From Podarcis tiliguerta (Eukaryota): 64,000 nt of DNA. A program made the position numbers and the translations under genes. The number at the start of each line of letters is the position of its first letter. Positions within the stretch are counted from its first letter, which is position 1. Shown here piece by piece: positions 955 through 34,137 of the stretch. The notes beneath the pieces were generated by a model. It made no database searches and was not told the origin of the DNA. It saw only the letters and a list, made by a program, of their open reading frames with translations. Location: assembly GCA_965153285.1 (NCBI GenBank), contig OZ229119.1. One strand, written 5' to 3'.

Positions 955-960
955 TTTATT
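955..960 (-). terminator. Probable ZFC3H1 polyadenylation signal (AATAAA); second ATTAAA at 916-921
   Basis: Plus-strand TTTATT in an AT-rich 3'UTR-like block ~730 nt after the stop; U-rich sequence downstream on the minus strand. Confidence 0.6.
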
Positions 961-1191
961 ATAAATTAAAATTTCTTTACAAAAAATTGCACATAATAAA
1001 TTGACCACTCTTAGGTTCTGATGCACTGGCAATTGCAACTGTATCTTTAATCTTCAAGTTTAAGTCTCTGCCACAAGTCCAGAATGCAGAAAGGGCAGGA
1101 AACCACCCTCATTGAGCCTTCAAGTGCAAAAAGCATACTTGTGGCCATGGCAGTTACTTTCCTTAAGAGCGGCTGCTTTTGTTTTTATATC

Positions 1192-1450
1192 CTGCAATGA
1201 AAACGAATCTCCAAAACGAAACAAAAAGGGATTGGGAAAGAGGGTGGGGTGGGGTTGGGAGGAAAACAAAGTGGACCGATTCTTTTTGCTGTAAACTCAG
1301 CCCATATTTTTAGCCCCAAACACAGATCTCTCAGGCATCAGTGCGAGCGTCAAGTGAAATCAGGAACCGCACAAAAGAAAATGAAAAATCGAAAATAAAA
1401 TATAAAAATTAACACATTTAAAGTCTGTCATTGGGATGAACTATACTTAC
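1192..1450 (-). other. Candidate intron inside the ZFC3H1 3'UTR
   Basis: Minus-strand donor TAC|GTAAGT at 1450; long pyrimidine tract and TTTTCATTGCAG|G acceptor at 1192. Confidence 0.55.
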
Positions 1451-1689
1451 GTACATGATGTTATGAGAGTCTGGCAGGGCCCAGAAGCAGGCCATAGAGG
1501 ACATTCATTTATCCAAGGAGGCGATCATGTCAATTGTTTCCAGGTTCAAGGAAAGCAGGCCAGAGAGAGACTTGATATGCTCAGCTTTGCGCATCTGCTT
1601 TTCAGAGGCCTAAAGCCAGAGATCAGCCTGAAGAATCATTCAAATGATTTTGGCATTTAATAGGACTTAGCACTGACTGCACCCAGTGT

Positions 1690-1827
1690 TCAGCGATTCG
1701 TGCTTTCTGTTCTGTAAGTGTTTAAATTTAAAAGCTCATCTAGGCTGACTCCAACCTCTTGGCACTTGGAAACTAGTTTTCTCAGGTTATCAGTTTTACC
1801 TCCTCCTGATGCTTCAAACAGGAGCTG
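1690..1827 (-). CDS. ZFC3H1: ZFC3H1 exon 35 (last coding exon)
   Basis: QLLFEASGGGKTDNLRKLVSKCQEVGVSLDELLNLNTYRTESTNR*; TGA at 1690-1692; CAGCAG tandem acceptor. Confidence 0.94.
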   Translation of the reverse strand, partial: QLLFEASGGGKTDNLRKLVSKCQEVGVSLDELLNLNTYRTESTNR

Positions 1828-4800
1828 CTGTAAGAGATGGTGAAGCAGACATAAGATTTAGCCAGAGCTGGAATATCACCACATCAATGGACATGGGATA
1901 TGCAGAAAATTGAAATGAAACCTTAAACGGAAACATAAGGAGAAAACATTACATCTTTCCACAGGGTTGCGCAAAGAGGTAGCTTCTGAAAGGCTCTCTG
2001 ATATAAGTGATGGACCTGTAAAGAAGAGACAAGAATCAATCTAATGTTATCCCAACAAAACTTATGTTTGTTGCGCAACATGCACTTTTTCTGTCTTATG
2101 TGCCTGTAACACAGGTTAGGAATGGTGACGATATGGCAGGGAAATGCTTGAGGGCTACTGCTAGATTTAAAAGCTTTACATTTTTCAAAAAGTGCTTAGT
2201 TTTAAGGCCGTAGAGCAGACATGGAAGCCTGATGACAACATTGTAAATGCTTAGAAGCAAGTTAGTCCTATCTGTCCCCATTTCAAATTGACTGAATTGG
2301 TTTACTGTGTGCCATATATTCAAAAGTTTGTACTGATCACTGAAGACTTCTTTGTTGGATTTAAGCTTCTTTTGTTATTTAAAGGCTCTGCAATCCTACA
2401 CCCACTTACTGAGGAATTAATTGTTCTGATTTCTTATCCACCCTTCACAGTGAGGACTCATGGTGTAACTATTTAAAAATACAGTATTGACATCCGCTAA
2501 AAAAACAGCTATACTGGAGGGAACAAGATAGGTCCCAAATACATATCTCAGGCATCAAAGGACAGAGTAAAGAGGTGTGCCTTCATCAGCATGTGAAAAA
2601 TTACAGAATGAAGATGTCAGACACACTTCTGTAGCTCAGGGACTGCCAAATAAATTACCACTCCTTGGACACTTAGCTAGTTTGTAGGGAAGGAGACAGC
2701 TATTTGGGACCTAGGCCTCATTCAAATAATCAGGTTTTGCTTCTGACATGTACAGGATTGCATAGTAAATGAGCATTATGTGAACAAGTGGGAAGAATTA
2801 AGTATGTTAAATTAACATCCTAAGTGTCCTTGTGTTGGCACACTACTGTGTTTGAAAGCTAAAGGTAAAGGTACCCCTGCCCGTACGGGCCAGTCTTGCC
2901 AGACTCTAGGGTCCGCAGACACTTCCGAGTCACATGGCCAGCGTGACGAAGCTGCTCTGGCGAACCGGCACCAGAGCAGCACACGGAAACGCCGTTTACC
3001 TCCCGCTATAAAGCGGTACCTATTTATCTACTTGCACCCGGGGGTGCTTTCGAACTGCTAGGTTGGCAGGCGCTGGGACCAAACGACGGGAGCGCACCCC
3101 ACCGCGGGGATTTGAACCGCCGACCATGCGATCGGCAAGTCCTAGGCACTGAGGTTTTACCCACAGCGCCACCCGCGTCCCTCCCTGTTTCAACCAAGTC
3201 TGGCTCTAGCACATCGAGCCCCTGACAGAATTAACCTAAAAGGAAAAAAGACTTAGCCAGAACCTTTCTTCATCCTTGCCTTCATTTGATAACGGACACA
3301 ATTTCTGAGGAGCAGACCTCTTATTCTAAAGCTCGCTTAGCAAGAACACTGTTCTCAAGCTTCTTTTTTTTAAGGTGTAGACTAGTTCATTAAACTCAGG
3401 GGTGAGGCTAGTTAAGTATCTTTGCAACTGGCTATTTCAATAAGCTTTTCTTACATACCTCTCTCTGTCCCTTTAGAAAGCACTCAGCAGCAATGGCTCT
3501 GAAGGGAAGAAATAAAAATGACTTATTTTTTTGCAGAATACAGAATATCTTTATGGGAAGAACACTGAGTATGGGATGGAACTATAAAAGTCCTGGAAAG
3601 TAACAGACTAACTCCCAATGATGGTAATCTATAGTGAAGAGACAAAAAAGATCCATTTCATAAACAATCTTACATGAGCAAGACATTTCAGTTGTTCCCA
3701 TTATGTACAAACACTGCAGACAATGATCAGTTCATCACCACTGGATATTGCTATTATGATATATAAAGGGGAGGGTAGAAAGGAGGAGGGAAACAGAAGT
3801 CAATAATTTAATGGTAAACATTCCAAAGCAGCAACAATAAAATTCATCAACACATTTTCCTTACTTAGACACACAAGGCATACTTACTTCTGAAATATTT
3901 TTTGTATGGGAAGCAACAGTCCTCATTTTACGACATTAGTGCCAGGAATCTGTCTAAACCAAAGTTTGTGGAAAGACTGCAATAATGAAAAACCTTTCTA
4001 GCATAAAACCAAATTTGAAGGCCTACTTCAAATGTAGCTTTATGAAGCAAACCTTATTTTTTTAAAAAAAATTATCTATGTTAACAGGTGTATGACTGTT
4101 GAATTACATTTTCCAGATGGCCAGGCATGTTGGGATATTATATGTAAACATCTTGGCTTGTAGTTTCAGAATCTGGACATTGCTCTCTTCCCAGTGTTGT
4201 TGAAGCAGCCTGCAGTGACAAAGGAGCAAAGGGAAACATGTAAAGCAGTAATACTAAGCTCTTTTAAAAGCTTGAACAGGGGTGGGGGGAGGTGGGAGAA
4301 GAGGCGCAAGGGAGAGTACAGTTAGGGGGAAAAGAAAGTACACCCTCTGTTGTGGTTGTACACATCAGGACATCATATTGTATCATGGTTTATTTAACAA
4401 AAATAAAGCCCAAATGGAGAAGCCATGTGTGAAAAACTAAGTACACCTTATCACTCAATAGTGTGAAGAACCACCTTTAGCATCAATAACTTGAAATAAT
4501 CGTTTTCTGTATGACTTTCACAATAATAGTAGTTGTAATAATACTACAGTGGTGCCCCGCAAGACGAATGCCTCGCAAGACGGAAAACCCGCTAGACGAA
4601 AGGGTTTTCCATTTTTCAATGCGCTTCGCAGGACGAATTTCTCTATGGGCTTGCTTCGCAAGACGAAAATGTCTTGCGATTCTTGCGATTTTTTTTCGCT
4701 CCCCACCCCCTTATTCTAAGGCACTAAGCTGCTAATAGCCTTTTAGCAGCTAATCCGCTAATCCCTTAAGCCTTTAATAGCCGCTAAACCGCTAATAGCG

Positions 4801-34078: not shown

Positions 34079-34137
<59 letters not shown>

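What the first reader, a model, noticed from the sequence alone, without database searches (positions are those of the whole stretch)
1192..1692. Splice-site cassette in the ZFC3H1 3'UTR: candidate two-way autoregulatory switch (nuclear retention versus NMD)
Seen: on the mRNA strand, 239 nt after the TGA, lies a consensus donor TAC|GTAAGT (1450) followed by a U-rich tract. At 1192 there is an ~80-nt pyrimidine-rich tract ending TTCATTGCAG|G. The whole 259-nt unit is upstream of the AATAAA at 955-960. Established: an exon junction more than 50-55 nt downstream of a stop triggers EJC-dependent NMD, and ZFC3H1 with U1 snRNP (U1-70K) promotes nuclear retention and decay of polyadenylated RNAs with an unused 5'SS in the terminal exon. 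Inference: the unspliced mRNA would be a substrate of ZFC3H1 itself and the spliced mRNA an NMD substrate. That would give the PAXT scaffold a feedback loop coupling nuclear and cytoplasmic surveillance.
Basis: partly seen in the sequence, partly recalled or inferred. Interest (0 to 1): 0.8.

Follow-up and report, generated by a model that had tools for sequence, protein, structure and literature searches.

The report
Splice-like cassette in lizard ZFC3H1 3'UTR
The 3'UTR of a lacertid lizard's ZFC3H1 gene really does contain a strong U1-binding donor and a strong acceptor 259 nt apart, but nothing available here shows that they are spliced or that they feed back on ZFC3H1, so the proposed two-way switch remains an untested idea.

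Summary
On the minus strand the TGA is at 1692-1690, TAC|GTAAGT has its G at 1450, TTCATTGCAG|G ends at 1192, the unit is 259 nt, and AATAAA is at 960-955. The gene is ZFC3H1 of a lacertid lizard.

The donor pairs with U1 over 8 consecutive bases, but its exon side (TAC) is poor. It ranks in the 11th percentile of this gene's own donors. The acceptor is strong, in the 89th percentile. A GTAAGT followed by such an acceptor arises in about 1-3% of comparable sequence by chance.

The block around the donor is conserved in two other unnamed species, seen only through an antisense ORF. The +1 G itself is not proven there.

Word shares suggest that probable RNA contigs keep the unit unspliced.

Published human data (PMC13391367) show ZFC3H1 mRNA rising when ZFC3H1 is depleted, with no cis element identified.

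Verdict: a real motif pair and a reasonable, testable hypothesis. There is no evidence of splicing or feedback. The scan had not noted this on other DNA.

The parts
1690..1827 (-). Coding part of the terminal exon of ZFC3H1, 45 codons plus TGA at 1692-1690
   Evidence: Translation is identical to the C-termini of the Podarcis raffonei and Lacerta agilis ZFC3H1 proteins, and the stop is at the same place in the snake, turtle and bird proteins compared
1451..1689 (-). Proximal 3'UTR segment of 239 nt between the stop and the donor-like site
   Evidence: Read directly; distance computed
1443..1453 (-). Donor-like site TAC|GTAAGTAT, with the G of GT at 1450
   Evidence: 8 consecutive Watson-Crick pairs to the U1 5' end (+1 to +8), one of 11 such sites in 128 kb. 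Own-gene PWM score 4.54, the 11th percentile of real donors; 6% of decoy GTs score as well
1436..1486 (.). Conserved block containing the donor-like site
   Evidence: The plus-strand ORF 1436..1657 has two Logan homologues (P0155, P0156). Their first 17 residues are identical to the window's except at position 11. Donor positions +1 and +4 fall on wobble positions, so they are not proven conserved
1192..1450 (-). Candidate 259-nt 3'UTR intron (GT...AG), 39% U
   Evidence: It is not a dispersed repeat, has no unusual fold (z = +0.26) and has no Rfam match
1371..1420 (-). U-rich tract (66% U) 30-80 nt downstream of the donor
1193..1272 (-). Pyrimidine-rich tract (76% Y, C-rich CCCCACCCC repeats) upstream of the acceptor
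   Evidence: only 0.2% of 80-nt windows are as pyrimidine-rich. The best branch-point-like site is CCAAT, with the A about 40 nt upstream of the 3'SS. A competing GAG lies 17 nt upstream of the CAG
1189..1200 (-). Acceptor TTCATTGCAG|GA, with the AG ending at 1192
   Evidence: Own-gene PWM score 9.66, the 89th percentile of real acceptors; only 0.66% of decoy AGs in the gene score as high
955..960 (-). AATAAA, the likely main poly(A) signal
   Evidence: The only AATAAA on this strand downstream of the stop
1656..1661 (-). ATTAAA 29 nt after the stop: a possible proximal poly(A) signal that would exclude the whole cassette
   Evidence: its use was not tested

Best explanation
The unit 1450..1192 is most likely a facultative 3'UTR intron that is mostly retained in lacertid ZFC3H1 mRNA. 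The bulk of the mRNA keeps the 259 nt and ends after the AATAAA at 960-955. In a minority of transcripts U1 would pair with GUAAGUAU and U2AF would bind the pyrimidine tract and CAG, removing the unit. That would leave an exon-junction complex about 215 nt past the stop, making the minor isoform a target of EJC-dependent NMD. What is shown: the sequence, the strength of the sites, the position relative to the stop, and conservation of the block around the donor. What is inferred: that any splicing takes place, and that the product is degraded. A link to ZFC3H1 dosage is not supported by anything found here.
For: The acceptor is as good as the best real acceptors of the gene, and the donor has 8 contiguous U1 pairs. 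Real donors of this same gene also lack G at -1 while carrying GTAAGT: TCA|, CAA|, GGA| and ACA|GTAAGT. The combination is a 1-3% chance event, whereas about 5% of human genes have 3'UTR introns (PMC4380460). The intron-like composition (39% U, a U-rich tract after the donor, 76% Y before the AG) differs from both flanks. The donor block is conserved in two other taxa. Fourteen small runs, guessed to be RNA, hold 0.77-0.86 of the sampled words of 955-1860, which is about the share of the large DNA-like runs of the same organism (0.86). The unit accounts for about 33% of the words, so it is present in their contigs and the unspliced form predominates if these runs are RNA.
Against: No read or transcript evidence of the 1451/1191 junction could be obtained. 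The donor scores low on the gene's own PWM because of C at -1 and T at -3. The small runs may be capture DNA rather than RNA. Conservation of the acceptor could not be examined. The branch point is weak and a GAG 17 nt upstream competes with the CAG. The cassette was picked out after the fact from a large scan.
Confidence: 0.4

Rival explanations
1. Chance motifs in an ordinary, partly conserved 3'UTR. The GTAAGT and the pyrimidine tract with CAG are never used by the spliceosome to any meaningful extent. The conserved block and the C-rich tract serve other 3'UTR functions, such as binding of RNA-binding proteins (for example PCBP-type C-rich sites) or microRNA sites.
For: GTAAGT occurs about once per 2.8 kb per strand. 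About 5 decoy pairs of equal quality lie in 128 kb, and 1.2% of shuffles produce one. 5'SS motifs are only about 25% depleted from human 3'UTRs. The donor PWM score is exceeded by 124 decoy GTs in this gene. The donor block is no better conserved than several other blocks of the same ORF alignment. The contigs keep the unit.
Against: The joint occurrence of an 8-bp U1 site, intron-like composition and a top-decile acceptor is uncommon, and the prior for real 3'UTR introns is of the same order as the chance rate.
Confidence: 0.33
2. A U1-binding site that works without being spliced. U1 snRNP bound at GUAAGUAU in the terminal exon acts together with the poly(A) site. It would either mark the mRNA for PAXT/ZFC3H1-LENG8 retention and decay, giving negative feedback, or modulate polyadenylation through U1-70K inhibition of poly(A) polymerase or telescripting over the weak hexamers at 1189 and 1051.
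For: A 5'SS in a terminal exon causes ZFC3H1- and U1-70K-dependent retention (PMC9074902). A 5'ss plus a pA site recruits PAXT. Human ZFC3H1 mRNA rises on ZFC3H1 or LENG8 depletion. The site lies 377 nt after the last exon junction, inside the zone where such motifs are depleted in human last exons. A DRACH (AGACU) lies 20 nt upstream. The local hairpin is only 5 bp and the fold is unremarkable.
Against: The exon side (UAC) does not fit the tested motif. The distance to the AAUAAA is about 490 nt against the 68 nt tested. A strong 3'SS follows, which should engage U2AF and the spliceosome instead. DRACH density equals background, 0.0177 against 0.0184. No lizard data exist.
Confidence: 0.15
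3. The unspliced mRNA is retained and degraded by ZFC3H1 itself, the spliced mRNA is degraded by NMD, and the balance sets ZFC3H1 dosage and couples nuclear and cytoplasmic surveillance.
For: The same evidence as for the two mechanisms above, plus published PAXT self-regulation in human cells with no cis element yet assigned.
Against: It requires both arms to be true and quantitatively relevant. It leaves no obvious productive mRNA unless the ATTAAA at 1661 is used or retention is leaky. No evidence exists for either arm in this species, and conservation beyond two unnamed taxa is unknown.
Confidence: 0.08

Closest known systems
TDP-43 (TARDBP) autoregulation through a normally silent 3'UTR intron (PMC3950720)
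   Same: An RNA-processing factor whose own 3'UTR holds an intron that is usually retained. Its removal lowers productive mRNA, and nuclear retention and NMD have both been invoked.
   Different: TDP-43 binds a defined UG-rich region inside the intron, and the main poly(A) site lies within that intron. Here no binding site for ZFC3H1 is known and no AATAAA or ATTAAA lies inside 1450..1192. Splicing is not demonstrated.
PABPN1 autoregulation by retention of its 3'-terminal intron and nuclear exosome decay (Bergeron et al. 2015, cited in PMC10158996)
   Same: A PAXT-associated factor controlling its own mRNA through an unspliced 3' intron and nuclear decay.
   Different: In PABPN1 the intron is the last coding intron and PABPN1 binds an A-rich tract in the 3'UTR. 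Here the unit lies wholly within the 3'UTR and the proposed sensor is the U1 site.
5'SS-motif nuclear retention and the 'nuclear RNA degradation code' (PMC4380460, PMC9074902, bioRxiv 2024.07.23.604837)
   Same: An intact U1-binding site upstream of a poly(A) site within a terminal exon.
   Different: Those substrates have a consensus exon side ([C/A]AG), no downstream 3'SS, and short spacing to the pA site in the constructs tested. Here the exon side is UAC, a strong 3'SS follows, and the pA signal is about 490 nt away.
PAXT self-regulation reported in HeLa cells (PMC13391367)
   Different: That work is in human cells. It attributes sensitivity to slow export and retained or detained introns in general and names no 3'UTR element. 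Whether the human 3'UTR has this cassette was not and could not be examined here.

Membership tests
NMD-triggering 3'UTR intron | GT-AG unit with competent splice signals lying wholly in the 3'UTR | tested here: met
   Donor with 8 U1 pairs; acceptor in the 89th percentile of the gene's real acceptors; unit of 259 nt
NMD-triggering 3'UTR intron | Exon junction more than 50-55 nt downstream of the stop codon | tested here: met
   239 nt from the stop to the donor
NMD-triggering 3'UTR intron | The junction is actually formed in RNA | not testable with these tools
The joined model was not built or searched.
NMD-triggering 3'UTR intron | The spliced isoform rises when UPF1 or SMG1 is inhibited | not testable with these tools
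   Needs an experiment or suitable RNA-seq
5'SS-motif / PAXT 'degradation code' substrate | Consensus motif [C/A]AG|GU[A/G]AG in the terminal exon | tested here: not met
   The site is UAC|GUAAGU. The intron side is perfect and the exon side does not match.
5'SS-motif / PAXT 'degradation code' substrate | Strong, accessible complementarity to the U1 snRNA 5' end | tested here: met
   8 contiguous pairs from +1 to +8. Only a weak 5-bp local hairpin, fold z = -0.48.
5'SS-motif / PAXT 'degradation code' substrate | 5'SS left unused, with no usable 3'SS before the poly(A) site | tested here: not met
   A top-decile acceptor lies 259 nt downstream, before the AATAAA
5'SS-motif / PAXT 'degradation code' substrate | DRACH / m6A sites supporting retention | tested here: inconclusive
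   13 DRACH motifs in the UTR, at background density. One AGACU lies 20 nt upstream of the site. Methylation is unknown.
5'SS-motif / PAXT 'degradation code' substrate | Retention or decay depends on ZFC3H1 and U1-70K | not testable with these tools
   Needs experiment. Only whole-mRNA data from human cells exist.
TDP-43-type autoregulatory silent 3'UTR intron | Intron normally retained in the mature mRNA | tested here: inconclusive
   Word shares show the unit is present in the contigs of 14 small runs, but whether these runs are RNA is only a guess
TDP-43-type autoregulatory silent 3'UTR intron | Main poly(A) site inside the intron, so that splicing switches the poly(A) site | tested here: not met
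   No AATAAA or ATTAAA between 1450 and 1192 on the mRNA strand
TDP-43-type autoregulatory silent 3'UTR intron | Binding site for the gene's own protein in or next to the intron | not testable with these tools
   No sequence motif is defined for ZFC3H1. Recruitment through U1 is an inference.

The most novel reading that the evidence does not exclude
The conserved U1 site and the downstream acceptor in the ZFC3H1 3'UTR form the missing cis element of PAXT self-regulation. Unspliced mRNA would be sensed by U1/LENG8/ZFC3H1 and held or degraded in the nucleus, while spliced mRNA would be removed by NMD. ZFC3H1 dosage would then be set by a two-compartment surveillance loop conserved in amniotes.
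Probability: 0.08. Interest if true: 0.75.

Novelty: new member of a known kind. Interest (0 to 1): 0.42.

Why it matters
PAXT decides which polyadenylated RNAs leave the nucleus, and ZFC3H1 is its scaffold. Recent human work shows that ZFC3H1 mRNA is itself PAXT-sensitive but names no element responsible. A U1 site and facultative intron in the 3'UTR would give a concrete, mutable element to test. It would also link nuclear (PAXT) and cytoplasmic (NMD) surveillance in one transcript. If it is only a chance motif pair, the result is a caution: splice-like cassettes of this quality arise in roughly 1-3% of 3'UTRs of this size.

Tried and rejected
No junction, depth or 3'-end data were obtained.

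2. Orthologous DNA. I did not use the spare metagenome scan on the conserved donor block, because host-derived hits could be human contigs that I may not keep.

3. Antisense-ORF proxy for conservation. It worked for the donor side and found nothing for the acceptor side. The two hits carry no accession or organism.

4. Dispersed repeat or transposon origin of the unit: rejected, no other copy in the window.

5. Structured RNA element: rejected, with fold z-scores of -0.48 and +0.26 and no Rfam hit.

6. Supplementary tables of PMC13391367 gave no intron-level entry for ZFC3H1 in the stored text.

Full report
**What is there.** Reading the minus strand confirms every coordinate in the finding.
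- The TGA stop is at 1692-1690.
- TAC|GTAAGTAT has the donor G at 1450, 239 nt after the stop.
- A pyrimidine-rich stretch ends in TTCATTGCAG|G, with the AG ending at 1192.
- The unit between them is 259 nt.
- AATAAA lies at 960-955.

The same strand also carries ATTAAA at 1661 (29 nt after the stop) and at 1051, and TATAAA at 1189.

**Gene and species.** The gene is ZFC3H1 on the minus strand, running from exon 1 at about 34936 to the poly(A) signal at 955. The closest proteins are Podarcis raffonei (176 of 185 residues identical in a fast-evolving exon) and Lacerta agilis (174 of 185). The window is therefore from a lacertid lizard. The last coding exon (1827-1690) and the stop position are the same in lizard, snake, turtle and bird orthologues. 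The cassette is therefore truly in the 3'UTR.

**How good are the sites?** I mapped about 31 real introns of this gene by tblastn and phase-consistent GT-AG choice. I used 28 of them to build donor and acceptor matrices.
- The donor scores 4.54, the 11th percentile of real donors, and 6% of decoy GTs score as well. The penalty comes from T at -3 and C at -1.
- The donor nevertheless forms 8 consecutive Watson-Crick pairs with the U1 5' end (+1 to +8). That makes it one of 11 such sites in 128 kb, several of which are real exon ends.
- Real donors of this gene also combine a non-G at -1 with GTAAGT.
- The acceptor scores 9.66, the 89th percentile of real acceptors. Only 0.66% of decoy AGs in the gene do as well.
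- The 80 nt before the AG are 76% pyrimidine, reached by 0.2% of windows. The tract 30-80 nt after the donor is 66% U, and the unit overall is 39% U, unlike both flanks.
- Weak points are a poor branch-point match (CCAAT, about 40 nt upstream of the 3'SS) and a competing GAG 17 nt upstream of the CAG.

**Chance.** A GTAAGT followed 70-600 nt later by an acceptor at least this strong appears in 1.2% of 3000 dinucleotide shuffles of the UTR. About five non-exon pairs of equal quality lie elsewhere in the 128 kb of both strands. The cassette is thus a 1-3% event per 3'UTR of this size. That is uncommon but expected in hundreds of genes genome-wide, and it was selected after the fact. The unit is not a dispersed repeat, has no unusual fold and matches no Rfam family.

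As a proxy I searched the plus-strand ORF 1436..1657, which is antisense to the donor region. Two Logan-derived ORFs from other, unnamed organisms matched, at 74% and 49% identity in the alignment. Their first 17 residues (MNYTYVHDVM.VWQGPE) equal the window's except at one position. The block 1436-1486 around the donor is therefore conserved.

There are two caveats.
- Donor positions +1 and +4 fall on third codon positions of this ORF, so the GT itself is not proven.
- Other blocks of the same alignment are equally conserved, so the donor is not singled out.

The matching search for the acceptor side found nothing, which says nothing either way.

The only indirect hint comes from word shares.
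- Fourteen small runs (65-143 million letters, guessed to be RNA) hold 0.77-0.86 of the sampled words of 955-1860.
- The large DNA-like runs of the same organism hold 0.86.
- The unit and its junction words make up about 33% of the words, so these contigs contain the unit.
- The step from 0.86 to 0.83 equals the roughly 3-4 words that overlap the last real intron (1828-1860), as expected for mature mRNA.

If these runs are RNA, the unspliced 3'UTR is the main form. They could also be capture DNA. Contigs cannot exclude a minor spliced form. The joined 1451/1191 model was not built or searched.

**Literature.**
A 5'SS motif in a terminal exon causes retention dependent on ZFC3H1 and U1-70K (PMC9074902). 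m6A is required for this retention (PMC11629677). A 5'ss plus a poly(A) site recruits PAXT (bioRxiv 2024.07.23.604837).
- PMC13391367 reports that rapid depletion of ZFC3H1 or LENG8 raises ZFC3H1 and LENG8 mRNAs in both nucleus and cytoplasm. It speaks of autoregulation of the PAXT pathway and names no cis element. An earlier paper saw a slight, non-significant rise of ZFC3H1 mRNA on EXOSC3 depletion (PMC8860595).
- No paper in the library mentions a ZFC3H1 3'UTR element or intron.

Four points count against the retention arm.
- The operational motif is [C/A]AG|GU[A/G]AG, and the exon side here does not match it.
- Such motifs are only about 25% depleted from human 3'UTRs.
- The tested spacing to the poly(A) signal was 68 nt, against about 490 nt here.
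- The authors argue that a 5'ss engaged with U2AF and a 3'SS does not recruit PAXT.

**Verdict.** The most likely reading (about 0.4) is a facultative, mostly retained 3'UTR intron whose occasional removal would create an NMD substrate. Nearly as likely (about 0.33) is that the motifs are never used. A U1 site acting without splicing is possible (about 0.15). The full two-way autoregulatory switch is possible but unsupported (about 0.08).

The closest known systems are the silent 3'UTR intron of TDP-43 (PMC3950720) and the terminal-intron retention of PABPN1 (Bergeron 2015, cited in PMC10158996). If real, this would be a new member of that kind, not a new principle. The hypothesis is cheap to test with existing lizard RNA-seq, vertebrate assemblies and the published human depletion data.

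Noticed in passing
window 1825-1830 (-): The acceptor of the last coding exon is a tandem CAG|CAG (NAGNAG). The lacertid proteins read WKDQLLFE, while a Tiliqua scincoides isoform reads WKDLLFE. Both AGs therefore appear to be used in squamates, giving isoforms with or without one Gln.
   Followed up: partly
window 1828-1952 (-): The last real intron is only 125 nt and has the weakest donor of the gene (GAT|GTAATG, consensus score 2.9). It might be a slowly removed terminal intron and so relevant to PAXT or PABPN1 sensitivity.
   Followed up: no
window 3456-3500 (-): A small exon (orthologue residues about 1912-1925) was missed by tblastn and found by peptide matching. Two intronic GTAAGT sites (3887, 2409) with good downstream acceptors (3629 and 2016) lie nearby.
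   Followed up: partly
window 34084-34137: A (TC)19(AC)8 microsatellite lies about 160-210 nt inside intron 1, just after the GC-rich exon 1 and CpG island (GC 0.59 at 34-36 kb). Another reader flagged intron 1 as a U12-type intron; this was not examined here.
   Followed up: no
The tool states that this is no evidence of anything. The stretch was left out of all later searches.
   Followed up: no
window 1656-1661 (-): An ATTAAA 29 nt after the stop codon could give a very short 3'UTR isoform lacking the whole cassette. The sequence just downstream of it is identical at the amino-acid level in the antisense ORF of P0155.
   Followed up: no
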